Sequence record: MK250027.1
Direction: 5' to 3' (one strand)
Length of the DNA: 64,000 bases
A model generated the notes under the pieces. That model ran no database searches and had not been told where the DNA came from. It was given only the letters and a program-made list of their open reading frames with translations. The translations under genes and the position numbers were made by a program. The number at the start of each line of letters is the position of its first letter. Positions within the stretch are counted from its first letter, which is position 1. Shown here in pieces: positions 13,366 to 45,109 of the stretch.

Positions 13366-14014
13366 TTTTGATAATAAAGGAGTTTCTATTAGTTCTAAAG
13401 ATATGAAGGAATTTCAGGAGAATGTAATGACAGTAGAAGATATTGTTAATAGACTTTTGAAGTTTTATTCAAAGGATAAGACATATATGGGTGAACAGAA
13501 ACAAATGCTTNNNNNNNNNNNNNNNNNNNNNNNNNNNNNNNNNNNNNNNNNNNNNNNNNNNNNNNNNNNNNNNNNNNNNNNNNNNNNNNNNNNAGCAGAT
13601 AATAAATTGCATAAACTTATTATGTGGCGTGATGATAACGGTCTTCATAATTTTGCAATGTGGCTTAAGAATGAAGATATGCTTGGTGGTAAGCTTGTAA
13701 AAATTTATCCAGAAGATGATGATATTTTTACAAAGAATCAAATGGAAGGTGCAATGTATCTTGCAGAAATTAATAAGATACCATATTTTGAAGGATGTGA
13801 TGAACATGCGGATAATTATGTATATCAAACAAAGTTGAAGGAACTTGATGATGAAATTGAAAATATCAAGAATCAACGAACATCTTGTAAGAACGAAATG
13901 AAATCTATTCAAGATAGATATGCTGAACTTCTTACATATTATGCAAAGATGAAAGTAAAGCAAGTTAAATTGCAAATTGAAAGAGAAACATTAGTTAATA
14001 AACATAAGAAGTAA
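13352..14014 (+). CDS. Hypothetical protein with C-terminal coiled coil
   Basis: ORF in frame across an N-run. Confidence 0.6.
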   Translation: MIKFNFDNKGVSISSKDMKEFQENVMTVEDIVNRLLKFYSKDKTYMGEQKQMLXXXXXXXXXXXXXXXXXXXXXXXXXXXXADNKLHKLIMWRDDNGLHNFAMWLKNEDMLGGKLVKIYPEDDDIFTKNQMEGAMYLAEINKIPYFEGCDEHADNYVYQTKLKELDDEIENIKNQRTSCKNEMKSIQDRYAELLTYYAKMKVKQVKLQIERETLVNKHKK

Positions 14015-14213
14015 TAGAANNNNNNNNNNNNNNNNNNNNNNNNNNNNNNNNNNNNNNNNNNNNNNNNNNNNNNNNNNNNNNNNNNNNNNNNNNNNNNNNN
14101 NNNNNNNNNNNNNNNNNNNNNNNNNNNNNNNNNNNNNNNNNNNNNNNNNNNNNNNNNNNNNNNNNNNNNNNNNNNNNNNNNNNNNNNNNNNNNNNNNNNN
14201 NNNNNNNNNNNNN

Positions 14214-14946
14214 NGTATTAACTATTATTCGTATTCCTAACAGAAGTAGAACAGAAGATAATCAAGATCCTGTATATACTACAATACCGGTTGGTATGAT
14301 GATAAAGGATAATATTTTTATTACAGCATATTATGGACAGAATAATGTTATATCAAATTTCATTAATTGGAGTAATCAGAAAAAGATTAATGATAGAATA
14401 GGATATAATCTTTATATAAGTATATTTCTTGAATCTAATTTTTGGTTTCTTAAATATCTTAAACAAATTCATATTCAGNNNNNNNNNNNNNNNNNNNNNN
14501 NNNNNNNNNNNNNNNNNNNNNNNNNNNNNNNNNNNNNNNNNNNNNNNNNNNNNNNNNNNNNNNNNNNNNNNNNNNNNNNNNNNNNNNNNNNNNNNNNNNN
14601 NNNNNNNNNNNNNNNNNNNNNNNNNNNNNNNNNNNNNNNNNNNNNNNNNNNNNNNNNNNNNNNNNNNNNNNNNNNNNNNNNNNNNNNNNNNNNNNNNNNN
14701 NNNNNNNNNNNNNNNNNNNNNNNNNNNNNNNNNNNNNNNNNNNNNNNNNNNNNNNNNNNNNNNNNNNNNNNNNNNNNNNNNNNNNNNNNNNNNNNNNNNN
14801 NNNNNNNAGCAGCACTTATTCCAGGATTTTATGGAATGAATTTAAATAATGGAATAGAAACATGGGCATATGGATTTCCTTTTGCTGTTTGTTTAACAGG
14901 AATATGTGCAGGAATATCTTATTTTTTATGTAAACTATTTAAGTAA
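14214..14946 (+). CDS. corA: CorA-family Mg2+/divalent cation transporter (partial; start and middle in N-runs)
   Basis: TIIRIP...YTTIPVGMMIKDNIFIT before the gap and PGFYGMN plus a TM helix after it, in the same frame. Confidence 0.75.
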
Positions 14947-14960
14947 ATATAAATATAAAT

Positions 14961-15161
14961 ATGAGTATATGTTTTAGAAATATAGATAAATGTAAATATT
15001 CAAAAGAAGAAATAAAACTTCGTATTATTGAAAATCTTATAGAAAATAGGTTTAAAAATTACAGTAATAAAGAGTTGAAAGATTCTATGTATGGTACTAA
15101 TAATGTTTACCCAAGATTTAATGAAATTTATAATTGGATTTGTGAATATGTATTTGAATAA
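14961..15161 (+). CDS. Hypothetical protein
   Basis: 66-aa ORF. Confidence 0.5.
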   Translation: MSICFRNIDKCKYSKEEIKLRIIENLIENRFKNYSNKELKDSMYGTNNVYPRFNEIYNWICEYVFE

Positions 15162-35171: not shown

Positions 35172-36755
35172 ATGGCAAATGTAGTTTTGCGACCTTGGGT
35201 AAAGGTTGTAGGAGTTATTGCGGTAGTTGCCGCTATTATGTTTGGTGCATCGAAATTCTTCGGTGGTAATAGTGATGATAAGTCATCTTCTAATAGTGGA
35301 GGATTGTTCAGTAACATTTTCTCTGGTAGTGATGATAACGTTATTACTATTGGTACAAATACATATGCAGGATTCCTTCCATTTATGTATTTGAATAATG
35401 GTCTTAATCCTAATGAGGATTGCCCTATTTACAAGGAATATGGTATTAAGTTGAAGATTGTCGTACAAGATGATTTTGCTGCAGGTCGAGCCGCATTTAA
35501 GAACGGCGATATTGATATTATTTATTGTACTGCAGATGCTCTTCCTGTTGAAATGAGCGAAGGTTCTGATATGAATGATACAAAATTCTTCAATATTTCT
35601 AACTGGTCACGAGGTGCTGATGCCATTGTAGTTAATAAAGGAATTCAGAATGTAAGCGGACTTATTGGTAAGGTTGTTTGTTGTTCACAGGGTACAGCAT
35701 CTCATACACTTTTGTTGAATACACTTGAGACAAATGGTATTGGAACAGATAAAGTAAACATGAGTAATTCTGTTGATCCAAATAAGGTTAATGTGAAGGT
35801 TGTAGATAGTGGCTTGGATGCAGCAAGTGCATTCCGTGCAGGTTCATGTGATGCAGCAGTTGTATTCTCTCCAGATGATCAGGATTTGGTTGCAACTGTT
35901 AAGGGAGCGCATGTATTGATTTCTACAACACAAGCATCAAATATTATTTGTGATGGTTTGATTGCAAAGCAGAGTTATCTTGATTCTAATAAGGAAAATA
36001 TAAAGAAACTTATTTCTGCATTGTTGTGGGCAAATAATCTTATGAATACTGATAGTAAAGCTGTAGCAACAGCAGCAAAGGCATTTGCAACTGCATATAA
36101 TACAGATGAGAATTTCGCTATTAATGGTTCAAAGAATATTCATTATGTCACATTGGGTGATGCTCAGAATTTCTTTGGGTTGAATAGCTCATATACAGGT
36201 GTAAAGGGAGATGAATTGTATTCAAAGATGGCTCGTACATATGAGTCTCTTGGACTTTGTAAGCATCCACTTGCATGGAGGAAAGTATCTTATTCTGATA
36301 TTATTGAGAGTATTGCATCTGAGCCTGATAAGGTAAAGGGCGATCAGTCTGCAGAAGCAGGTCCAAAGTTTAATGAAACATCTATATCAGATGCAGAAAC
36401 GAAGACAGCAATTTCAGACAAGAAGGTAACTATTGAATATGGTGTAAATAGTGATATTCTTGATAACGCAGCACAGAGTATTATTGATAAGGAATTTGCT
36501 GGTATTGCAAAACAGTTTGCAGGTTCAAAGATTCGAATTATTGGTAATACGGATAATACAGGTAATTATGCATATAATGTAGATTTGTCTCGTAGACGTG
36601 CACAGTCTGTTGCTAATTATCTTGTAAAAGAATATGGATTTGATAAGAATCGTTTCATTATTATTGGTAATGGTCCAAAGCGTGCTGTTACAGATGGTGT
36701 AGTAGGAGATAATAAGTCATATCGTTCTACTGATTTTCAGTTGATTTCAGAGTAA
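35172..36755 (+). CDS. ABC substrate-binding protein (NMT1/SsuA-like) fused to a C-terminal OmpA-like peptidoglycan-binding domain
   Basis: N-terminal TM; WSRGADAIVV, GTASHTLL, DAAVVFSPD; IIGNTD...NVDLSRRRAQSVANYL...IGNG. Confidence 0.85.
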   Translation: MANVVLRPWVKVVGVIAVVAAIMFGASKFFGGNSDDKSSSNSGGLFSNIFSGSDDNVITIGTNTYAGFLPFMYLNNGLNPNEDCPIYKEYGIKLKIVVQDDFAAGRAAFKNGDIDIIYCTADALPVEMSEGSDMNDTKFFNISNWSRGADAIVVNKGIQNVSGLIGKVVCCSQGTASHTLLLNTLETNGIGTDKVNMSNSVDPNKVNVKVVDSGLDAASAFRAGSCDAAVVFSPDDQDLVATVKGAHVLISTTQASNIICDGLIAKQSYLDSNKENIKKLISALLWANNLMNTDSKAVATAAKAFATAYNTDENFAINGSKNIHYVTLGDAQNFFGLNSSYTGVKGDELYSKMARTYESLGLCKHPLAWRKVSYSDIIESIASEPDKVKGDQSAEAGPKFNETSISDAETKTAISDKKVTIEYGVNSDILDNAAQSIIDKEFAGIAKQFAGSKIRIIGNTDNTGNYAYNVDLSRRRAQSVANYLVKEYGFDKNRFIIIGNGPKRAVTDGVVGDNKSYRSTDFQLISE

Positions 36756-36827: not shown

Positions 36828-37325
36828 ATGAAATATAAGCATGAATTAATAGGTAAGAAAGTATTAATTATATGTGATTGTGATGGTATAAGTATTCATC
36901 GAATATATTGTGCATATATATTGGGTGAAGTTATTGATTATAATCCTATTACAAATGAAATAAGTATTAGGATAATTAATAATGATATGAATTACTATAG
37001 AATGTACAAATTATTTTATAGTAAATTAGGAACACGTACATATTTTGAATTTAAACTTAATACATATGATCCTTTTGATCATAAATACTGTTCAGATAAT
37101 CGTTTAGGATATATAGATCCAAGGGACTATAATGATTTATGGTGGTATGAAGCATATTCAGGTAATGAAGCAATATCATTATTAAAAAATAACCTATTAG
37201 AAACAAAAGATAAACCTGTATATAATTATTGTTATCTATCTACTGATTGTTATGGTAGTTTTAAATCTAAAAAAGAATATTTAACATATCTTTTAAATGA
37301 ATTAAGTAATGAAAATACAGAATGA
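36828..37325 (+). CDS. Paralog family X, copy 1
   Basis: MKYKHELIGKKVLIIC...YCAYILG...DPF. Confidence 0.75.
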   Translation: MKYKHELIGKKVLIICDCDGISIHRIYCAYILGEVIDYNPITNEISIRIINNDMNYYRMYKLFYSKLGTRTYFEFKLNTYDPFDHKYCSDNRLGYIDPRDYNDLWWYEAYSGNEAISLLKNNLLETKDKPVYNYCYLSTDCYGSFKSKKEYLTYLLNELSNENTE

Positions 37326-37749
37326 TTTAATAGGTAAAAAAGTACTAATTATTCATACATATGTTAGTAAATTCTTTAGGAGTTATTGTACATACCATAT
37401 AGCAACAATTAAATATTATTATCCATCAGGTAATTTTATTATTGTAGAATGTCCGAATATTAATCGCACAAGATTTACATTAATAGATCATGATGATCCA
37501 TTTATAAATAAAGATTATTCAGATAAAAAATTGGCAATGAATTTTTCAACTAATGATGGATGGTATTATGTATTTACAAATGAATATTCAATCAAGCAAT
37601 TAAAATATAATTTAATACATTATAAGAATAAACGTTCATTCAATAGTTGTAGAATGATAGTTTCTACGGGGCGTTTAATGACAACAAAAGAACGAAAAAA
37701 CTGTTTTGAAACATTATTAAGTAAAATACAAGATGAAATATCGAAATGA
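37309..37749 (+). CDS. Paralog family X, copy 2
   Basis: MKIQNDLIGKKVLII...YCTY...DDPF. Confidence 0.75.
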   Translation: MKIQNDLIGKKVLIIHTYVSKFFRSYCTYHIATIKYYYPSGNFIIVECPNINRTRFTLIDHDDPFINKDYSDKKLAMNFSTNDGWYYVFTNEYSIKQLKYNLIHYKNKRSFNSCRMIVSTGRLMTTKERKNCFETLLSKIQDEISK

Positions 37750-38191
37750 TTTAATAGATAAGAAAGTATTAATTATATGTAATAGTTCTGGTCCTAACAA
37801 CTGGAATCATTATTGTAGTTATGTTGTTGGGAAAGTAATAAGTTATAATCCATCTATTAATTCTATAATGATTGAATATGGTGATAAAACACGAAACTAT
37901 TTTTCTTTAATTGATTATAATGATCCATTTAAGAAACATAATGATAGTTATAATAGAGGACTATATAAACGATTAGCATATAAAATACCATTGAATAGAT
38001 ATTCAGAAAGTTGGTGGTATGATGTCTTTTCATTACAATCTGCAGAAAAATTATTAAATCATAATATTAAACATTCACGAGAAAAATATGTATATGGTGA
38101 ATGTATATTATCAAAAGTATGTTATAATCATATAAGTAAAAAGAATTTTTTTGAATTATTATTAAAAGAATTAAAAGATGAATCTAATTAA
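37733..38191 (+). CDS. Paralog family X, copy 3
   Basis: MKYRNDLIDKKVLIIC...YCSYVVG...NDPF. Confidence 0.75.
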   Translation: MKYRNDLIDKKVLIICNSSGPNNWNHYCSYVVGKVISYNPSINSIMIEYGDKTRNYFSLIDYNDPFKKHNDSYNRGLYKRLAYKIPLNRYSESWWYDVFSLQSAEKLLNHNIKHSREKYVYGECILSKVCYNHISKKNFFELLLKELKDESN

Positions 38192-39011
38192 ACGTTTATT
38201 TAAATTTGGAGGAACTTCTGATTTTGGTACGTTAACAAATGTAATTATTAGTATCATAGGTGCTGTTATTATCATTATGGGATGGCATTTCATTTCTGCA
38301 TATGATATTGTATCTAGTAATATTCTTCCAGATCCATTTAAGGTAATTGGTAGTATTCCTACACTTATTACTGAAAATCATTTGTTTGCAAATATTTGGT
38401 ATACAGTGAAACTAAATCTTTCATGTTATGTATATGCAATTTTGCTGTCATTTCCAATAGGATTTTTTATAGCATTATATCCTATTAATAATATACTATT
38501 TGGAAAATATATTAATTCTGTAAGATTTATTCCATTGCCTTCTATTACAGGAATTTTCTTAGCAATATTTGGACTTACATTTGGAATGAAAGTATGGTTT
38601 CTTACTGTTGCAATTATGATTTACATTATTCCTTCTGTTGTTAATAAGGTAAATGATTTACAAAATCCTGCTAATGAAAAAGATAATGTATATCTTCAGA
38701 CCGCACAAACAATGGGTATGTCTGCATGGCAGAAGTTCAGATATGTATATTTCCCTTATGTAACAGGTGGTGTAGTTGATTCTTGTATTGATTTGCTTGC
38801 AATTAGTTATAGTTATGTAGTTATTGCAGAAATGATTTATAAGGATGGAACTATAAGTGGTATGGGTGCATTGATTAATACGATGGTAAGACAATCACAA
38901 ATGTCTTCCGCATATGCATTGTTATTCTTAATTATTATTATTGGTTGCGTACAGGATTTCTTGTTTAAGAAAGGTGCAAGACTATTATTTCCTTACAAAT
39001 ATAAAAATTAA
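38178..39011 (+). CDS. ABC transporter permease (SsuC/NitT-like)
   Basis: LPDPFKV, multiple TMs, EAA loop YLQTAQTMGMSAWQKFRYVYFP. Confidence 0.9.
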   Translation: MNLIKRLFKFGGTSDFGTLTNVIISIIGAVIIIMGWHFISAYDIVSSNILPDPFKVIGSIPTLITENHLFANIWYTVKLNLSCYVYAILLSFPIGFFIALYPINNILFGKYINSVRFIPLPSITGIFLAIFGLTFGMKVWFLTVAIMIYIIPSVVNKVNDLQNPANEKDNVYLQTAQTMGMSAWQKFRYVYFPYVTGGVVDSCIDLLAISYSYVVIAEMIYKDGTISGMGALINTMVRQSQMSSAYALLFLIIIIGCVQDFLFKKGARLLFPYKYKN

Positions 39012-39019
39012 TAAAGATT

Positions 39020-40009
39020 ATGAGTGATTTTAAAACATTATTTGGACAAAATAATCAAGAGGATAAGAAAACACCTATCCTGTTAGAACAAGAAAAAAAT
39101 ATTAATTCATCTACAAATGATTCCAGTATTCCTGATGTAAGTAATAATGTAGATAAGTCAAATACACCAGATGTAAGTTTACCTAATAATCAGAAAAAAG
39201 ATCGGGGTGATGGTAAAATAGATGTTGTTAATTTTAAAAATTTAACACAAATATTTAATAAAGGTAAGAAAAATGAATATAAATTATTTGAAAATTTCTC
39301 TTTGAATATAAATGATATTCCGAATGATTTTCAATCCGTGAGTATTATGGGCACATCTGGCTGTGGAAAAAGCAGATTAGTACGTCTTTTATGTGGATTG
39401 GATGACGTTCAATCTGGAAGTGTTTCTGTATATGGTAAATCATTATCAGAATTTGGTAATATTCCTATGGTATTTCAAAATCATAGTAATAGTAATTATC
39501 CTTGGATGAAAATTATAGATAATGTAATGTTACCAATGATTATTAGAGGATTTTCTAAAAAAGATGCGTATGAGAAAGCATTACAATTGATTAAGTTAGT
39601 TGGACTTGAAGGAAAAGAAAACGATTATCCAAATATGCTAAGTGGCGGACAAAATCAACGTATAGCAATTAGTAAATGTCTTGCTTCGAATTCTCAAATT
39701 ATTGTATTAGATGAAGCAACTGGCGCATTAGATATAAAAATGAAAAAAGAGATTCAAAATATTATTTTAAAAATATTATATGATTCAAACGTAGATCCTA
39801 CTATTATTAATATTACTCATAGTATTGAAGAGGCTCTATATATAAGTAATAAAATTTTTATATTAAAAGCTAACCCTTGCGGTATTGTTAAAGTTATGAA
39901 TATTCATTATCCAAATGAAGAAAATATGCACCGAGATGAATGGATTTTTCAAACAGAAGAGTATAAAAAATATTATTTAGAATTATCAAAAACATTATCT
40001 AATATTTAA
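39020..40009 (+). CDS. ABC transporter ATPase (SsuB/TauB-like)
   Basis: Walker A GTSGCGKS, Q-loop VFQ, LSGGQNQR, LDEATGALD, ITH. Confidence 0.92.
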   Translation: MSDFKTLFGQNNQEDKKTPILLEQEKNINSSTNDSSIPDVSNNVDKSNTPDVSLPNNQKKDRGDGKIDVVNFKNLTQIFNKGKKNEYKLFENFSLNINDIPNDFQSVSIMGTSGCGKSRLVRLLCGLDDVQSGSVSVYGKSLSEFGNIPMVFQNHSNSNYPWMKIIDNVMLPMIIRGFSKKDAYEKALQLIKLVGLEGKENDYPNMLSGGQNQRIAISKCLASNSQIIVLDEATGALDIKMKKEIQNIILKILYDSNVDPTIINITHSIEEALYISNKIFILKANPCGIVKVMNIHYPNEENMHRDEWIFQTEEYKKYYLELSKTLSNI

Positions 40010-40052
40010 ATAGATAAATATAATGGATTCATAATTATTTATGAATTTATAT

Positions 40053-40090
40053 TTTGCAAAGTTGAGCATATTACTAAATTTAGTAATATG
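40053..40090 (+). terminator. Terminator between the ATPase and the endonuclease
   Basis: gagcatattactaaa/tttagtaatatgctc plus T-run. Confidence 0.75.
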
Positions 40091-40139
40091 CTCTTTTATT
40101 TTATAGATAAATATAATGCAAAATATAAATTAAATAATT

Positions 40140-41303
40140 ATGAGAAATATTACACATGATGAATTTATCACATGTGCTAGATCTATACACGGTGATAAAT
40201 ATGATTATTCATAGACAAAGTTTATTAATAAATCTACGTTAATTAAGGTATCTGATAATATACATGGTATTTTTGAAATTCTTCCATTTAAACATTTATT
40301 ATACGATGGATATAATAAAAATTATTTAAATAGTTATGCGAATGAATACAAAAAACATTTTATAGAAGTATGAGTTCATAATAATAAATATGATTATTCA
40401 AAAACAGTATATATACATTCATAAACAAAAATGTTAATAACATGTCCTATACATGGTGATTTTTATCAATTACCAATGTCACATATACATGGTAAAGGTT
40501 GTAGTAAATGTGGTGATTTATCTACAGCTTATAAACAAGCATATACAACTGAAGAATTTATTAATAAATCAAAATAGATACATGGTAATAAATATGATTA
40601 TTCTAATGTACATTATATAAGTAACAAATATAAGGTTATTATAGGATGTCCTATACATGGTAATTTTTTATAGTCTCCTGATAAACATTTAAATGGTTGT
40701 GGTTGTAGAAAATGTGCTGATATTTATACAGCAAATGTACGTAGAAAAACTACAGAATGGTTTATTACTAAAGCAATACAAATACATGGTATGAGATATG
40801 ATTATAGTAAAGTAAATTATACTGGTATTTGGAATAAAATAAAAATAATTTGTAATGAACATGGGACTTTCTTTTAGTCTCCTCGAAAGCATTTATTAGG
40901 TCATGGTTGTCCAAAATGTGTTTTATATAAATTAGAAAATACAATATCATTATTACTTGATAACAATAATATTAAATATAATAAAAATTATAAAGAATTT
41001 AAATGGTTAATAAATGATATTAATCATTCATTAGAATTAGATTTCTATATACCTGAATATAATATTGCTATAGAATGTTAGGGTAAATAGCATTTTGAAC
41101 CAGTTGAAAAATTTGGAGGAAATGAAGCATATCAAATATAGGTTAAAAATGATTAGATAAAATAGACATTATGTAAATAGCATAATATAAAATTATGTTA
41201 TTTTTGTGACAAATATAACTATATAAATAATTATAAATTAGGATATTTAACATATAAAACAGAAAATTTATTAGAATATATACGATTTCATTTATTGGTT
41301 TAA
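40140..41303 (+). pseudogene. Decaying homing-endonuclease-like gene (DUF723-like Zn repeats plus PD-(D/E)XK domain), TAG=Gln; true stops at 40371 (TGA) and 40422 (TAA)
   Basis: Repeats IHGxKYDYS...CPIHGxFxQ.P..H..G.GC.KC; LDFYIPEYNIAIEC[TAG]GK[TAG]HF; 10 in-frame TAG. Confidence 0.8.
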
Positions 41304-41308
41304 TATAC

Positions 41309-41656
41309 ATTTCAATAGCCCGATCACTTGCATGTGATTCAAAATTACTTATGTTAGATGAATATTCGTCAGGTCTTGATTATTTCACTAAATTTGAATT
41401 ACAAGATCTTCTATTAAGTATTTTTAATAATAGAGATGTAGATAGAACATTCTTGATGGTTACTCATGATATTTCAGAGGCTGTATATCTTTCAAATCGT
41501 ATTTATATATTGGAACCAAATCCATGTAGAATCAAGGATGTAATTGATATTAAATTCAGTCAACCAAGAACACAAGCTATTCGTGAAACAGATGAATTTA
41601 AAAATTATCAAGCTAAAGTTCTTAAAGCATTAAATGAAACAATTAATAATAAGTAA
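41309..41656 (+). pseudogene. Orphan C-terminal half of a second ABC ATPase (ATG at 41351 gives 101 aa)
   Basis: ISIARSLACDSKLLMLDEYSSGLD...VTHD colinear with 39020 from just after its LSGGQNQR; no Walker A. Confidence 0.85.
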
Positions 41657-41667
41657 TTTTAAAAATT

Positions 41668-42003
41668 ATGACAAAACATATTATAACATTTGGTGATCTT
41701 AATTCTGGAGATCATATTTTTAGATATAGAATTGTTAAAGACAAAGCTAAATTAGAAACATTAGTAGTACAAGATATTAAAATTACAAATGATAAAGCTA
41801 TAATAATTATAAAAGATTCATCCATAATTTATACTTTTGATAAAGAACGAACATATATTATGGGCGGTAATAATGATGATTGGAGTAGTTCTGTCATTGT
41901 CTCCGATTATGAATTAGTGGAATTCATTAAAACTGTTATTAATATAACAAAACAACCACTTATAAGACAACATGTTAATTTAATAAATTTTATATCAGAT
42001 TGA
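41668..42003 (+). CDS. Hypothetical protein
   Basis: 111-aa ORF; terminator at 42009-42048. Confidence 0.65.
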   Translation: MTKHIITFGDLNSGDHIFRYRIVKDKAKLETLVVQDIKITNDKAIIIIKDSSIIYTFDKERTYIMGGNNDDWSSSVIVSDYELVEFIKTVINITKQPLIRQHVNLINFISD

Positions 42004-42061
42004 AATATAAAAAGGTGAGATAATATACTAAACTATCTCACCTTTTTTCTTTATATATAAT

Positions 42062-42514
42062 ATGAAAATATTAAATGATATAGTTAATAAAAAAGTATTA
42101 ATAATATATAAATGTAATGGTCCTGCTGGATGGCATAGAGATTATTGTGGTTATAAAATTGGGAAAATAGTAGAATATAATATTGAAAATAATACTATTA
42201 ATATTGAAGATAAAAAGAAAAATATAAAAACATATAAAATTATAGATAAAAAAGATCCATTTAATTTAAATTTAATACAAAATAATGATAATAGATTCGC
42301 ATATTATCATATTTCAAAATATAGGCAAATACGTGAATGGGAAAATGTTTTTATATATAATGATGCATTAACTATTTTAAAAAATAGTATTAAACAATCA
42401 CATTCACAATATGTATATAAACTATTTTGTTTATCTTCATTTTCATATGGTAAAAAAACAAAGAAAAGGTTTTTAAGAGATTTATTAAAGGAATTAGAAG
42501 AAAATTATCAATAA
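42062..42514 (+). CDS. Paralog family X, copy 4
   Basis: MKILNDIVNKKVLII...YCGYKIG...KDPF. Confidence 0.75.
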   Translation: MKILNDIVNKKVLIIYKCNGPAGWHRDYCGYKIGKIVEYNIENNTINIEDKKKNIKTYKIIDKKDPFNLNLIQNNDNRFAYYHISKYRQIREWENVFIYNDALTILKNSIKQSHSQYVYKLFCLSSFSYGKKTKKRFLRDLLKELEENYQ

Positions 42515-43044: not shown

Positions 43045-43164
43045 TAATATAATAATTAAAAACAAACGCTTATTTGATTTTCGTAGCGTTATGGATAAGT
43101 TGATAGAATTCAGAAATTCCTTTTAAGACGAATACACATGGAATGGTCCATTGGTGGAATTGGT

Positions 43165-43473
43165 AAAGTGTTTGCCTGCATTAATTTGTAGAATCCATCA
43201 AATTCAGTATCAGTTAGGATTAAATTTTAAATATTAGTAGTTGCTATTGACGAAAATATTGACAATAATTAATTTATTGTTACCTGAGGAATAAGTGTTT
43301 ATTTAATAAACAACGAAGAAGCTGACTAAGAAAACCTAAGGTCTTCATAAGAAGATAGCTTGGTAATACTGAGCCAAGATAATTTTTAATTATAAGGTGC
43401 AGAGACTATACGGTGGGAACTAATAGCAAGTTAAGATATAGTCCAAACTTTATAGAAATATAAAGAGTTTTTG
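43165..43473 (+). ncRNA. Group I intron in the tRNA D-loop (309 nt, no ORF)
   Basis: 5' exon ends in U and intron ends in G; P1 GGU-AAA/UUU-GCC; P10 AGACAC/GUGUUU; GCAGAGACUA and AAGAUAUAGUCC core elements. Confidence 0.85.
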
Positions 43474-43488
43474 AGACACGAGGGACTT

Positions 43489-43836
43489 AAAAAATTTGAG
43501 TGCTCTATTGAGAAATCATAGAAGTAGAATCTCCCTAACGAAACGGAAGCCTAATTATTGGTGACAATAATGGTGGTGACGAACTCACTAAGTTGTTATA
43601 GAACGTTAATCTATATTAAATGTAAATTGAAGTGTTACAGCATAAATAGCGAAGAGACTATAGAGGAGATACCTAAGTTAAAGTACACGAAGAATAATCA
43701 ATTAGATTATCACTATATATGAAGAGTATATAGTTTTATAATAAGGAATGCGCATTACTTTAATATGGTAGTAAAATAGTCCAGACTACAACATCTTAAT
43801 AATTAAGATGGCTTGTATTAAAGCAAGAGTAGTAAG
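43489..43836 (+). ncRNA. Group I intron in the anticodon (U^AA; 348 nt, no ORF)
   Basis: P1 ACUU/GAGU with U.G at the splice site; GAAGAGACUA and AAUAGUCC core; terminal G; same site as the cyanobacterial trnL intron. Confidence 0.85.
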
Positions 43837-43893
43837 AAAATCCCTTGGGCAGAAATGCCCGTGCCGGTTCGAATCCGGCATGGACCACATATA

Positions 43894-43972: not shown

Positions 43973-45109
43973 ATGATTACAATTACAGAACAATATATAA
44001 AAGAGTACCAAAAGAAATTAGATGATATTTCTAAATCATTTGATTTAGAGAAACAACATATTATAGTTGAAGAATTATCAATTAAAGTTTCTGCACCAGA
44101 TTTTTGGGATGATTTTGAAAGTGCGACATCAATCACAAAAGAACTTAATACAGCAAAAGAAAAGATAGATGATGTTGAACATATGAAAATGCTTATTGAT
44201 GAGTTATCAACTGCATTAATGTATTATAAGGAATTTGAAGGTAAAGATGAAGAAGAATATGTAAATCTAGCGAATTCTGAATTAATTAGTGAATTCAGTA
44301 AATTTGAGGATAAGTATAGATTTGTTGATCCTACAGATTCATTAGGAGCTGTATTAGACATTAATGCAGGTGCAGGAGGAACAGAAGCAAATGATTGGGC
44401 AAATATGTTATTCCGTATGTATGAGATGTGGGCAAAATCAAATAATTATAAGTTTAATGTTTTATATTATTCAGAAGGGGATAAAGTAGGTATTAAAAAT
44501 GTATCTATTGAAATTACTGGTAATAATGCGTATGGAACATTAAAAGGTGAAACCGGTGTTCATAGAATGGTAAGGGTTTCACCATATAATGCACAAGGTA
44601 AACGTATGACTAGTTTTGCTGCAGTTTCTGTTGTGCCTTTAGTAGATAATTCTATCAAGGTTGAAATTGACGATTCTAAATTAACAATAGATACATTTAG
44701 ATCTTCTGGTGCTGGTGGTCAAAATGTAAATAAGGTAGAATCTGGTGTACGTGTAAATTATATGTATACAGATCCAGATACAGGTGAAACAGAAAAAATT
44801 CAAGTTGCAAATACAGAAACAAGAGATCAACCAAAGAATAAAGAAAGAGCAATGCAAATTCTTAAATCTATTCTTTATAAGAAAGCATTGGATAAACAAT
44901 TAGCTAAGAAAAAAGAAATAGAAGATGCAAAACTTAAAAATGAATGGGGTGCACAAATTAGATCTTATGTATTTGATGATAAGCGAGTAAAAGATCATCG
45001 TACAGGTTATCAAACAACTGATGTTGATTCTGTTATGAATGGAAATATAAATGGTTTTATAGAATCATATAATAATTGGATTATTGAGCAAGAAAATAAT
45101 AGACTTTAA
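43973..45109 (+). CDS. prfB: Peptide chain release factor 2
   Basis: GAGGTEANDW, VRVSPY (SPF-type anticodon motif), GAGGQNVNK, WGAQIRSYV; single uninterrupted ORF. Confidence 0.93.
   Translation: MITITEQYIKEYQKKLDDISKSFDLEKQHIIVEELSIKVSAPDFWDDFESATSITKELNTAKEKIDDVEHMKMLIDELSTALMYYKEFEGKDEEEYVNLANSELISEFSKFEDKYRFVDPTDSLGAVLDINAGAGGTEANDWANMLFRMYEMWAKSNNYKFNVLYYSEGDKVGIKNVSIEITGNNAYGTLKGETGVHRMVRVSPYNAQGKRMTSFAAVSVVPLVDNSIKVEIDDSKLTIDTFRSSGAGGQNVNKVESGVRVNYMYTDPDTGETEKIQVANTETRDQPKNKERAMQILKSILYKKALDKQLAKKKEIEDAKLKNEWGAQIRSYVFDDKRVKDHRTGYQTTDVDSVMNGNINGFIESYNNWIIEQENNRL

What the first reader, a model, noticed from the sequence alone, without database searches (positions are those of the whole stretch)
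39660..41656. Gene-end replacement: an endonuclease element appears to have brought a new 3' half of the ABC ATPase
The order is: intact ATPase, terminator, endonuclease, then an orphan ATPase C-half. The orphan starts 5 bp after the endonuclease stop, exactly at the residue following the ABC signature (IAISKCLASNSQIIVLDE versus ISIARSLACDSKLLMLDE). No second N-half and no intron core are visible. The simplest model is that a unit of [replacement 3' half + terminator + endonuclease] inserted at the conserved LSGGQxQR site, restored the gene with a cleavage-resistant allele and displaced the original end. The orphan is still an open 101-aa frame, so it might act as a dominant-negative or regulatory partner.
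Basis: partly seen in the sequence, partly recalled or inferred. Interest (0 to 1): 0.8.

Follow-up and report, generated by a model that had tools for sequence, protein, structure and literature searches.

The report
Endonuclease cassette replaced megaphage ATPase gene
In a Lak megaphage of gut Prevotella, a mobile unit made of a foreign ABC-transporter ATPase domain, a terminator and a homing endonuclease has overwritten most of the phage's own ATPase gene and left its tail as an orphan, showing in a phage a self-rescuing selfish element otherwise known from fungal mitochondria.

Summary
The window is Prevotella phage Lak-B, which reads TAG as glutamine. It holds an intact ABC ATPase (39020-40009), a terminator hairpin (40064-40093), an endonuclease gene (40140-41303) and an orphan ATPase C-terminal third (41309-41656).

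Relatives without the endonuclease carry one ATPase. Its C-part matches the orphan, but its N-part does not match 39200-39660. The imported unit is the whole nucleotide-binding domain plus terminator plus endonuclease (about 39199-41311). It replaced 430-550 bp of the native gene and kept only the resident N-terminal linker.

Three pairs of nearly identical backbones (about 88%, 97% and 98.7% identity in the flanks) differ only by this unit. The right junction is always inside the LSGG codons. The left junction moves to wherever homology begins. The unit is far less diverged than the backbones that carry it. These patterns are the footprint of homing. The endonuclease has zinc-ribbon repeats and a Vsr-like nuclease domain. 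It is intact in relatives and decaying in Lak-B.

The orphan's low dN/dS mostly predates invasion, so nothing shows that it functions. I rate this a new variant of a known kind and moderately interesting.

The parts
38178..39011 (+). ABC permease gene of the resident backbone. It serves as the left homology arm.
   Evidence: NCBIfam SaoP/TauC-type permease. Collinear with all Lak relatives, with or without the cassette, at 85-99% nt identity.
39020..39198 (+). Resident 5' end of the ATPase gene: the start codon and a low-complexity N-terminal linker, about 59 codons. It is fused in frame to the imported domain.
   Evidence: Homologous to the linker of the element-free relative L017/P0125. Homology ends at 39198.
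39199..40009 (+). Imported ('B-type') ABC nucleotide-binding domain, from the KKDRGDG motif to the stop codon. With the resident linker it forms the intact 329-aa ATPase (39020-40009).
   Evidence: About 40% aa identity to native Lak ATPases, but 60-68% to other huge-phage ATPases and 55-58% to Bacteroidales ATPases. It groups with P0008 and L011-type phage proteins in both half-trees. dN/dS is 0.03-0.11.
40010..40139 (+). Cassette intergenic region. It holds a terminator hairpin at 40064-40093, flanked by an exact 16-nt direct repeat (40010-40025 and 40103-40118).
   Evidence: Column identity is 95% among six cassette copies.
40140..41303 (+). Free-standing homing-endonuclease gene with four zinc-ribbon (DUF723) modules and a Vsr-like nuclease domain. 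It is decaying here: TGA at 40371-40373 and TAA at 40422-40424 leave an ORF at 40431-41303. It has 10 in-frame TAG=Gln codons.
   Evidence: Translations. Pfam DUF723 on the intact 389-aa orthologues. PHROG 559, 681 and 9084, annotated as endonuclease families. AlphaFold model pLDDT 84.8; residues 265-388 match Vsr at Z 10.5 and I-Bth0305I at Z 10.1.
41304..41311 (+). Right junction of the cassette. In relatives the native sequence resumes 6 nt after the endonuclease stop, inside LSGG|MLQR. Lak-B has lost about 13 more nt here.
   Evidence: Alignments.
41309..41656 (+). Orphan: the displaced native C-terminal third of the resident ATPase (Walker B, D-loop, H-loop, C-terminal helices). The ORF is 41351-41656, 101 aa.
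   Evidence: About 90% or more aa identity to the C-part of element-free Lak ATPases. It nests among native alleles of its own backbone lineage in the C-half tree.

Best explanation
The stretch 39199-41311 is a mobile gene-replacement cassette that circulates among Lak megaphages. It consists of a complete foreign ABC nucleotide-binding domain, a terminator and a free-standing homing endonuclease with DUF723 zinc ribbons and a Vsr-like nuclease domain.

**Proposed mechanism**
1. During co-infection the endonuclease cuts the native ATPase gene of cassette-free genomes at or within a few nucleotides of the LSGG signature codons. The endonuclease can only be translated once TAG is read as Gln.
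2. The right end of the break pairs directly with the orphan of the donor, which is homologous up to the break.
3. The left end finds no DNA homology in the foreign domain. It is resected 430-550 bp, until it reaches the N-terminal linker or the permease gene.
4. Gap repair copies the cassette. The native N-part is destroyed, the native C-part stays behind as an orphan, and the transporter stays functional because the cassette supplies a whole domain fused in frame to the resident start.
5. The foreign allele differs at 17 of 36 positions across the presumed target, so it is presumably immune.
6. The first junction probably arose by one-sided illegitimate break repair in a Lak-A/C-like genome.
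7. Once a lineage carries the cassette, the endonuclease decays, as in Lak-B.

**Shown:** the anatomy, the presence/absence pairs, the junction pattern, the phylogenetic incongruence, the nuclease fold, and purifying selection on the domain and the endonuclease.

**Inferred:** cleavage at that site, immunity of the foreign allele, late timing of expression, and the founding event.
For: **1. Three occupied/empty pairs on near-identical backbones**
- L015 vs Lak-A1: flanks 98.7% and 98.3% identical. A 2,134-bp cassette replaces 433 bp.
- L099 vs L102: flanks 97.1% and 96.9%. 2,234 bp replaces 539 bp.
- Lak-B vs L017: flanks 87-89%. 2,113 bp replaces 460 bp.

**2. One constant junction, one variable junction**
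- The right junction has the same sequence in L015, L098, L099 and L007, one base different in L010, and is shortened by a further deletion in Lak-B. It lies after GG of the second Gly codon of LSGG.
- The left junction varies with backbone homology: codon about 52 in L015, about 59 in Lak-B, about 10 in L099.
- In L099 the first 14 nt or so past the junction are donor-type, which is a short co-conversion tract.

**3. Incongruent divergence**
- L099 vs the others: permease dS 1.9-3.3 and orphan dS 1.5-3.9.
- The imported domain has dS 0.10-0.21 against L007, L015 and L098, and the endonuclease dS 0.27-0.33.
- Endonuclease dS is 0.11-0.33 in all pairs, with dN/dS 0.13-0.28.

**4. Trees**
- Orphans nest with native alleles of their own backbone.
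- Intact genes form one clade among other huge-phage ATPases.

**5. Nuclease identity**
- Fold matches and family hits.

**6. Decay in Lak-B**
- Two stops in the window. Lak-B variants in IMG/VR have a 203-nt deletion between internal repeats.

**7. Precedent**
- Co-conversion, resection to distant homology and one-sided illegitimate repair are documented for T4 homing (PMC2988022).
Against: - No cleavage assay exists, so the target site and the immunity of the foreign allele are inferred.
- One founding event followed by ordinary homologous recombination, or positive selection for the foreign ATPase, would give the same constant-right, variable-left junction pattern.
- No donor carrying the foreign ATPase plus endonuclease without an orphan was found.
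- The imported domain falls into two sublineages ({Lak-B, L010} vs {L007, L015, L098, L099}, dS about 0.7-1.0), while the endonuclease does not. The cassette is therefore itself mosaic and its history is more complex than one simple sweep.
- The endonuclease in this window is damaged, so here the element is at best a relic.
Confidence: 0.8

Rival explanations
1. Passive cassette. The unit arose once by illegitimate recombination and has since spread among Lak lineages by ordinary homologous recombination, perhaps because the foreign ATPase is advantageous. The endonuclease is only a passenger.
For: The junction pattern alone cannot separate driven from passive spread. Lak genomes are clearly mosaic: the imported domain has two sublineages that are unlinked to endonuclease divergence. 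The imported domain is under strong purifying selection (dN/dS 0.03-0.11).
Against: The endonuclease is intact or nearly so in most of the cassette lineages sampled: full-length in L007/L008, L098 and L099/L100, with a frameshift only in the last few codons in L015. Its dN/dS is 0.13-0.28, so its function is maintained. It sits exactly at the one invariant junction, inside a highly conserved motif, which is typical of homing sites. The cassette is much younger than three different backbones that carry it.
Confidence: 0.12
2. Ancestral tandem ATPases. Lak ancestors carried two complete ATPase genes. Lak-A/C lost the first, and Lak-B lost the N-part of the second.
For: Both ATPase types are widespread in huge gut phages.
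Against: No genome with two complete copies was found. Backbones 97-98.7% identical differ by presence or absence of the unit. The intact gene shares its first 10-59 codons with the native gene of the same backbone, so it is a chimera at the same locus. Cassette divergence is far below backbone divergence.
Confidence: 0.03
3. Functional orphan (an add-on to the main model). The 100-119-aa C-terminal fragment is expressed and kept by selection, for example as a modulator of the transporter.
For: The ORF is open in every cassette-bearing lineage examined: Lak-B, L001-3, L007/8, L010, L015, L098 and L099/100. Pairwise dN/dS is 0.04-0.11.
Against: Orphan divergence tracks the backbone, not the cassette, so most of it accrued while the sequence was part of a working gene. 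Against the nearest native allele, the synonymous:nonsynonymous count is 37:15. The permease gives 113:31, which is not distinguishable. The only two differences between Lak-B and its close variant are nonsynonymous, and one lies next to the H-loop His. The fragment lacks Walker A, the Q-loop and the signature motif. In the Glomus atp6 and cox2 hybrids the displaced native end is not transcribed (PMC3630166). No RNA data were available.
Confidence: 0.1
4. Split or spliced gene. The endonuclease sits in an intron, an intein or a 'fractured gene', and the N-part joins the orphan at RNA or protein level.
For: The endonuclease fold family (Vsr-like, EDxHD) is known from introns and from fractured genes with split inteins (PMC3239194, PMC2677866).
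Against: The upstream ATPase is complete, with its own stop and a terminator. No intron model matches. The native N-part is absent. The orphan begins out of frame with the endonuclease and has no intein motifs.
Confidence: 0.01

Closest known systems
Mobile endonuclease ORF ('mORF') gene hybrids of fungal mitochondria: Allomyces macrogynus atp6; Glomus atp6, atp9, cox2, nad3 (PMC3630166, citing Paquin et al. 1994)
   Same: An endonuclease ORF is inserted in a protein gene. It brings a foreign, diverged copy of the gene part that it would otherwise disrupt. The hybrid gene stays intact. The native C-terminal end is displaced downstream of the endonuclease, and that end is the part that resembles close relatives.
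   Different: Here the host is a 550-kb phage and the gene is an auxiliary ABC importer ATPase. The imported piece is a whole domain reaching upstream of the break, with deletion of the native N-part, not just the 3' end. A terminator separates the gene from the endonuclease. The endonuclease is Vsr-like with DUF723 modules, not LAGLIDADG or GIY-YIG. Its translation needs TAG=Gln.
Intronless homing of free-standing phage endonucleases (T4 seg and mob genes), including one-sided illegitimate break repair (PMC2988022)
   Same: A free-standing endonuclease gene lies beside the gene it targets. Flanking sequence is co-converted. Resection must reach homology that flanks the endonuclease. Microhomology junctions form when one side lacks homology. 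Defunct copies occur after fixation.
   Different: In T4-type cases the flanks are homologous alleles and no gene remnant is left. Here the co-converted flank is a xenologous domain (about 40% aa identity), so part of the gene is replaced and an orphan is left. Cleavage has not been tested here.
I-Bth0305I / EDxHD family of Vsr-like homing endonucleases (PMC3239194), and DUF723/CapR-type zinc-finger repeat DNA-binding modules of phage endonucleases (PMC10448857)
   Same: The C-terminal nuclease domain superposes on I-Bth0305I (Z 10.1, rmsd 2.6 A over 92 of 97 residues) and on Vsr (Z 10.5). The N-terminal part is made of repeated zinc-ribbon modules. Recombination between these repeats makes deletions, as reported for ICP1 endonucleases.
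   Different: No significant sequence match to any solved structure. Here the DUF723 repeats are joined to a Vsr-like domain and not to T5orf172. The gene is free-standing and not intron-borne. The correspondence of the catalytic motif was not verified residue by residue.
Genes-in-pieces created by endonuclease insertion (Aeh1 nrdA, cited in PMC2988022) and fractured genes with split inteins (PMC2677866)
   Same: A free-standing endonuclease gene lies between two pieces that are homologous to one gene.
   Different: In those cases both pieces are needed and together make the protein. Here the upstream gene is complete by itself and the downstream piece is redundant.

Membership tests
Free-standing homing endonuclease element (intronless homing) | Encodes a nuclease of a recognised homing-endonuclease fold | tested here: met
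   Residues 265-388 of the model match Vsr (1cw0_A, Z 10.5) and the I-Bth0305I catalytic domain (3r3p_A, Z 10.1). PHROG 559, 681 and 9084. Relatives carry Pfam PF04480.
Free-standing homing endonuclease element (intronless homing) | Present or absent at the same site in otherwise near-identical genomes | tested here: met
   L015 vs Lak-A1 (98.7% flanks), L099 vs L102 (97%), Lak-B vs L017 (87-89%).
Free-standing homing endonuclease element (intronless homing) | Element history is incongruent with the host backbone (horizontal spread), with co-conversion of flanks | tested here: met
   For L099, cassette dS is 0.10-0.33 against backbone dS 1.9-3.3. The left crossover point varies, and a 14-nt donor tract lies to the right of the junction.
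Free-standing homing endonuclease element (intronless homing) | Site-specific cleavage of the element-free allele, with resistance of the element-bearing allele | not testable with these tools
   Inferred only. The invariant junction lies in the LSGG codons, and the foreign allele differs at 17 of 36 positions there.
Free-standing homing endonuclease element (intronless homing) | Not embedded in an intron or intein | tested here: met
   No Rfam intron hit in 38900-42100. The gene has its own ATG after a terminator.
Fungal-mitochondrial mORF gene hybrid (Allomyces atp6 type) | The endonuclease ORF carries a foreign copy of the gene end, and the native end is displaced downstream | tested here: met
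   The intact C-part is foreign. The orphan matches element-free relatives.
Fungal-mitochondrial mORF gene hybrid (Allomyces atp6 type) | The resident gene core upstream of the insertion point is kept and fused to the imported end | tested here: not met
   Only the N-terminal linker (10-59 codons) is resident. The native Walker A to signature region (430-550 bp) is deleted and replaced.
Fungal-mitochondrial mORF gene hybrid (Allomyces atp6 type) | LAGLIDADG or GIY-YIG endonuclease in an organelle genome | tested here: not met
   Vsr-like/DUF723 endonuclease in a phage genome.
EDxHD (I-Bth0305I) homing endonuclease family | Vsr-like catalytic domain with the composite E, D, H, D catalytic residues | tested here: inconclusive
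   The fold matches. D303 is invariant and E314, H320 and D340 are nearly invariant in 30 homologues. Residue-by-residue equivalence to the EDxHD motif was not checked, and there is no significant sequence hit to the PDB.
ABC importer ATPase, NitT/TauT (SsuB/TauB-like) | Walker A, Q-loop, LSGGQ signature, Walker B and H-loop in one chain, encoded with a cognate permease and binding protein | tested here: met
   Met for 39020-40009. NCBIfam SaoA, TauB and NtrCD models match at E 1e-38 to 1e-45, though below each model's curated cut-off. Permease and SsuA-like binding protein genes lie upstream. The orphan has only Walker B, the D-loop and the H-loop, so it is not a complete ATPase.
Fractured gene / split-intein locus | Two gene halves, both required, flanking a free-standing endonuclease, with split-intein motifs | tested here: not met
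   The upstream gene is complete. No intein-like sequence lies at either junction.

The most novel reading that the evidence does not exclude
The orphan is not junk. The 100-119-aa Walker-B/H-loop fragment would be translated and kept by selection in cassette-bearing Lak phages, for instance as a partner or brake of the imported ATPase dimer. The cassette would then create a new small protein each time it homes.
Probability: 0.1. Interest if true: 0.75.

Novelty: new variant of a known kind. Interest (0 to 1): 0.55.

Why it matters
It is a natural 'cut and rescue' selfish element caught in the act in the largest known gut phages. The endonuclease appears to target the catalytic signature of an auxiliary transporter gene, and it carries its own diverged, presumably uncuttable replacement domain.

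The three occupied/empty backbone pairs make the element's homing directly testable, because they predict where the endonuclease cuts. They also give a clean example of how homing endonucleases can move whole xenologous protein domains between phage lineages and leave orphan gene fragments that annotators would misread.

It extends the fungal-mitochondrial 'gene hybrid' phenomenon to phages and to the Vsr-like/DUF723 endonuclease family. It also shows an endonuclease rich in recoded TAG sitting inside an otherwise TAG-free gene block. This fits the published idea that recoding delays endonuclease production until late in infection.

Tried and rejected
- **Table 11 reading of 40010-41310.** It gives only short ORFs. 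I rejected it in favour of TAG=Gln. This code is shown by the genome itself: TAG-rich long ORFs and an RF2 gene. It is also published for Lak phages (PMC8297831; bioRxiv 10.1101/2021.08.26.457843).
- **Whole genome of the window.** Not held.
- **Search for the original donor (foreign ATPase plus endonuclease, no orphan).** Among the 80 best IMG/VR endonuclease loci, only Lak-B copies lie next to an ABC ATPase. The protein search found no endonuclease between 49% and 88% identity. The contig of the closest outgroup ATPase, P0008, ends 250 nt after the gene and shows no endonuclease.
- **Orphan dN/dS as evidence of function.** Values are 0.04-0.11. I rejected this as evidence after seeing that orphan divergence follows the backbone rather than the cassette. 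The synonymous:nonsynonymous counts against the nearest native alleles also do not differ from those of the permease.
- **Tandem-duplicate and differential-loss model.** Rejected; see the rival explanations.
- **Intron or ribozyme.** No hit in 38900-42100.
- **Sequence search of the endonuclease against solved structures.** Nothing significant. The Foldseek E-values for the whole model were weak. The domain-level second look gave clear Z-scores.
- **Expression evidence.** Only assembled contigs of DNA runs were on offer, and no RNA holder was found. They merely confirm cassette-bearing relatives in pig-gut metagenomes.
- **The 16-nt direct repeat around the terminator as a target-site duplication.** Left open. 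It is conserved in all cassettes. A similar motif follows the ATPase of an unrelated phage contig, so it may be a promoter-like signal.
Full report
**What is in the window**

The window is 100% identical, over the ATPase protein, to Prevotella phages Lak-B4, B5, B7 and B8. Lak phages read TAG as glutamine (PMC8297831; bioRxiv 10.1101/2021.08.26.457843). The window shows this itself. Long ORFs appear in 16.2-30.8 kb and 49.1-64 kb only when TAG=Gln. An RF2 gene lies at 43973-45109.

The finding sits in an ABC importer operon:
- an SsuA-like binding protein fused to an OmpA domain (35172-36755);
- three small paralogous ORFs;
- a permease (38178-39011);
- an ATPase (39020-40009).

After the ATPase stop come four further features:
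- a 13-bp terminator hairpin (40064-40093);
- an endonuclease gene (40140-41303) that is readable only with TAG=Gln;
- five bases later, a frame homologous to the last third of an ABC ATPase (41309-41656);
- within that frame, an ORF of 101 aa (41351-41656).

The orphan and the intact C-part are 38% identical.

**Relatives without the endonuclease**

Lak-A1, Lak-A2 and Lak-C1 have one ATPase and no endonuclease.
- Their C-part is about 90% or more identical in protein to the Lak-B orphan.
- Their whole nucleotide-binding domain is only about 40% identical to the intact Lak-B gene.
- DNA homology between Lak-B and Lak-A/C stops at about 39069 and resumes at 41312.

A closer element-free relative, L017, has the Lak-B-type N-terminal linker. 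It places the left break at 39198.

The unit 39199-41311 (2,113 bp) therefore replaced 460 bp of native gene. It brought a complete foreign domain, not a 3' half. Only the resident start and low-complexity linker were kept, fused in frame.

**The unit is polymorphic on near-identical backbones**

| Occupied locus | Empty locus | Flank identity | Cassette size | Native DNA replaced |
|---|---|---|---|---|
| L015 | Lak-A1 | 98.7% and 98.3% | 2,134 bp | 433 bp |
| L099 | L102 | 97.1% and 96.9% | 2,234 bp | 539 bp |
| Lak-B | L017 | 87-89% | 2,113 bp | 460 bp |

Further carriers are L007/L008 (contigs of 525 and 306 kb), L010, L098, L100 and pig-gut contigs.

**Junctions**

The right junction has the same sequence in L015, L098, L099 and L007, and L010 differs by one base. 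The endonuclease stop is followed by six bases, and then native sequence resumes after GG of the second glycine codon of LSGG. Lak-B has lost about 13 more bases there, including the MLQR ATG that starts a 117-119-aa ORF in the other copies.

The left junction differs with the backbone:
- after TTTDG (codon about 52) in L015, L007 and L098;
- at codon about 59 in Lak-B;
- at codon about 10 in L099, whose own linker is unrelated, so the Lak-A-like linker came in with the cassette.

In L099 the first 14 bases or so to the right of the junction are donor-type and the rest is recipient-type. The residual bases encode the Met of LSGGMLQR, which was seen only in the Lak-A/C alleles among those compared. 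This points to a founding event in a Lak-A/C-like genome.

**Divergence and trees**

Values below are Nei-Gojobori estimates.

| Comparison | dS | dN/dS |
|---|---|---|
| Permease, L099 vs the others | 1.9-3.3 | - |
| Orphan, L099 vs the others | 1.5-3.9 | - |
| Imported domain, L099 vs L007, L015, L098 | 0.10-0.21 | - |
| Endonuclease, L099 vs the others | 0.27-0.33 | - |
| Endonuclease, all pairs | 0.11-0.33 | 0.13-0.28 |
| Imported domain, all pairs | - | 0.03-0.11 |

The imported domain falls into two sublineages, {Lak-B, L010} and {L007, L015, L098, L099}, separated by dS of about 0.7-1.0. The cassette is therefore mosaic itself.

In protein trees, all intact genes form one clade beside P0008 and other huge-phage ATPases. 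The orphans nest among native alleles of their own backbone: L099 with P0129; Lak-B, L007 and L010 with L017; L015 and L098 with Lak-A/C. Huge phages outside the Lak group have the same operon with a foreign-type ATPase and neither endonuclease nor orphan.

**The endonuclease**

- Intact orthologues are 389 aa and carry Pfam DUF723.
- PHROGs 559, 681 and 9084 are endonuclease families.
- The wider family is very large in huge phages and giant viruses. Some members carry the Vsr-type PF04480 domain.
- An AlphaFold model (pLDDT 84.8) shows four zinc-ribbon modules and a C-terminal domain.
- That domain superposes on Vsr (Z 10.5, rmsd 2.9 A over 102 residues) and on the homing endonuclease I-Bth0305I (Z 10.1, rmsd 2.6 A over 92 of 97 residues).
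- DUF723-type zinc-finger repeats are described as DNA-binding modules of phage homing endonucleases, and recombination between them produces deletions (PMC10448857).

In this window the gene has a TGA (40371) and a TAA (40422). Lak-B variants from IMG/VR share the TAA, lack the TGA and have a 203-nt out-of-frame deletion between internal repeats. The gene is decaying in the Lak-B lineage.

The endonuclease has 10 TAG codons inside a 30.8-49 kb block that otherwise has almost none. It can therefore be made only after the code switch. A similar case and reasoning are published for an intron endonuclease in Agate phages (bioRxiv 10.1101/2021.08.26.457843).

**Is the orphan functional?**

The ORF is open in all carriers and pairwise dN/dS is 0.04-0.11. 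However, orphan divergence follows the backbone, so most of it accrued before invasion.
- Against the nearest native allele, the synonymous:nonsynonymous counts sum to 37:15. The permease gives 113:31.
- This is compatible either with constraint or with a short residence time.
- The only two differences between Lak-B and its close variant are nonsynonymous.

I treat the orphan as a young remnant and put the probability that it functions at about 0.1.

**Mechanism**

The best reading is homing with asymmetric repair.
1. A cut is made at or near the LSGG codons of the native allele.
2. The right end pairs with the donor's orphan.
3. The left end is resected through the non-homologous native N-part until it meets the linker or the permease.
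4. Gap repair then copies the cassette.

Co-conversion, long resection to homology and one-sided illegitimate repair at microhomologies are all established for T4 homing (PMC2988022).

The rivals are:
- passive spread by general recombination or by selection for the foreign ATPase (0.12);
- ancestral tandem genes (0.03);
- a split or spliced gene (0.01).

**Comparison with what is known**

The closest match is the fungal-mitochondrial 'gene hybrid'. There, a mobile endonuclease ORF carries a foreign C-terminus and displaces the native one, as in Allomyces atp6 and Glomus atp6, atp9, cox2 and nad3 (PMC3630166). This case differs in several ways:
- the host is a phage;
- the endonuclease belongs to a different family;
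- a whole domain is imported and the native N-part is deleted;
- a terminator lies between the gene and the endonuclease;
- translation is gated by TAG.

Limited searches of the paper library found no description of this in Lak or other phages.

**Limits**

- There is no biochemical or expression evidence.
- The donor is unknown.
- Tree and dS estimates come from short genes in a recombining population.
- Saturated dS values above 1.5 are only qualitative.

Noticed in passing
window 43145-43888 (+): ARAGORN with introns allowed finds a tRNA gene with a long variable arm. It calls it Leu(GAG), 95 nt when mature, split by a 649-nt intron in the anticodon loop. Rfam's group I intron model matches 43291-43465 at 40.5 bits (gathering score 50), E = 1.4e-8. 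Default ARAGORN found no tRNA in the window. The gene lies about 85 nt upstream of the RF2 gene. The splice site, and so the anticodon, is uncertain. In Lak-A1 and L015 this stretch is replaced by a 267-aa ORF that contains TAG codons.
   Followed up: partly
window 1-64000; HE at 40140-41303: ORFs with in-frame TAG cluster in 16.2-30.8 kb and 49.1-64 kb. The blocks 1-16.1 kb and 30.8-49 kb are almost TAG-free. The endonuclease (10 TAG) is the exception inside the second TAG-free block, which also holds the RF2 gene (43973-45109).
   Followed up: partly
window 36828-38191 and 42062-42514: A family of small paralogous ORFs (146-165 aa, starting MKY.N.LIGKKVLII) has three tandem copies between the binding-protein and permease genes and one more downstream. 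Copy number differs between Lak lineages: one in Lak-A/C and L017, two in L098 and L009, three in Lak-B and L007. The two copies scanned (36828-37325 and 42062-42514) have no match in the family libraries tried, PHROGs and NCBIfam respectively.
   Followed up: partly
window 35172-36755: The transporter's SsuA/NMT1-like substrate-binding protein is fused to a C-terminal OmpA-like peptidoglycan-binding domain. The same fusion occurs in other huge gut phages (L011-L013).
   Followed up: no
window 40010-40025 and 40103-40118: An exact 16-nt direct repeat (ATAGATAAATATAATG) brackets the terminator hairpin between the ATPase and the endonuclease. It is conserved in all cassette copies. A similar motif follows the ATPase of the unrelated phage contig L101. 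It could be a promoter-like signal or a footprint of how the terminator module was acquired.
   Followed up: partly
L017:10590-10640 vs window 39640-39690: The element-free Lak-B-like relative L017 spells its LSGGQ codons (AGTGGCGGACAA) exactly like the imported allele and unlike Lak-A/C (TCTGGTGGTATG). This may be a naturally resistant target site or a small conversion patch.
   Followed up: no
window 14001-15000: A 1-kb stretch has only 11% G+C, the lowest in the window. It overlaps a 216-aa ORF (14296-14946). No tandem array was reported inside 14001-15000.
   Followed up: no
L099:1387-2337: The L099 cassette copy lacks ten codons (TNLKKERGDG) at the left junction. This is consistent with deletion or crossover between two GATGGT(AAA) microhomologies that flank them in other copies.
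   Followed up: partly
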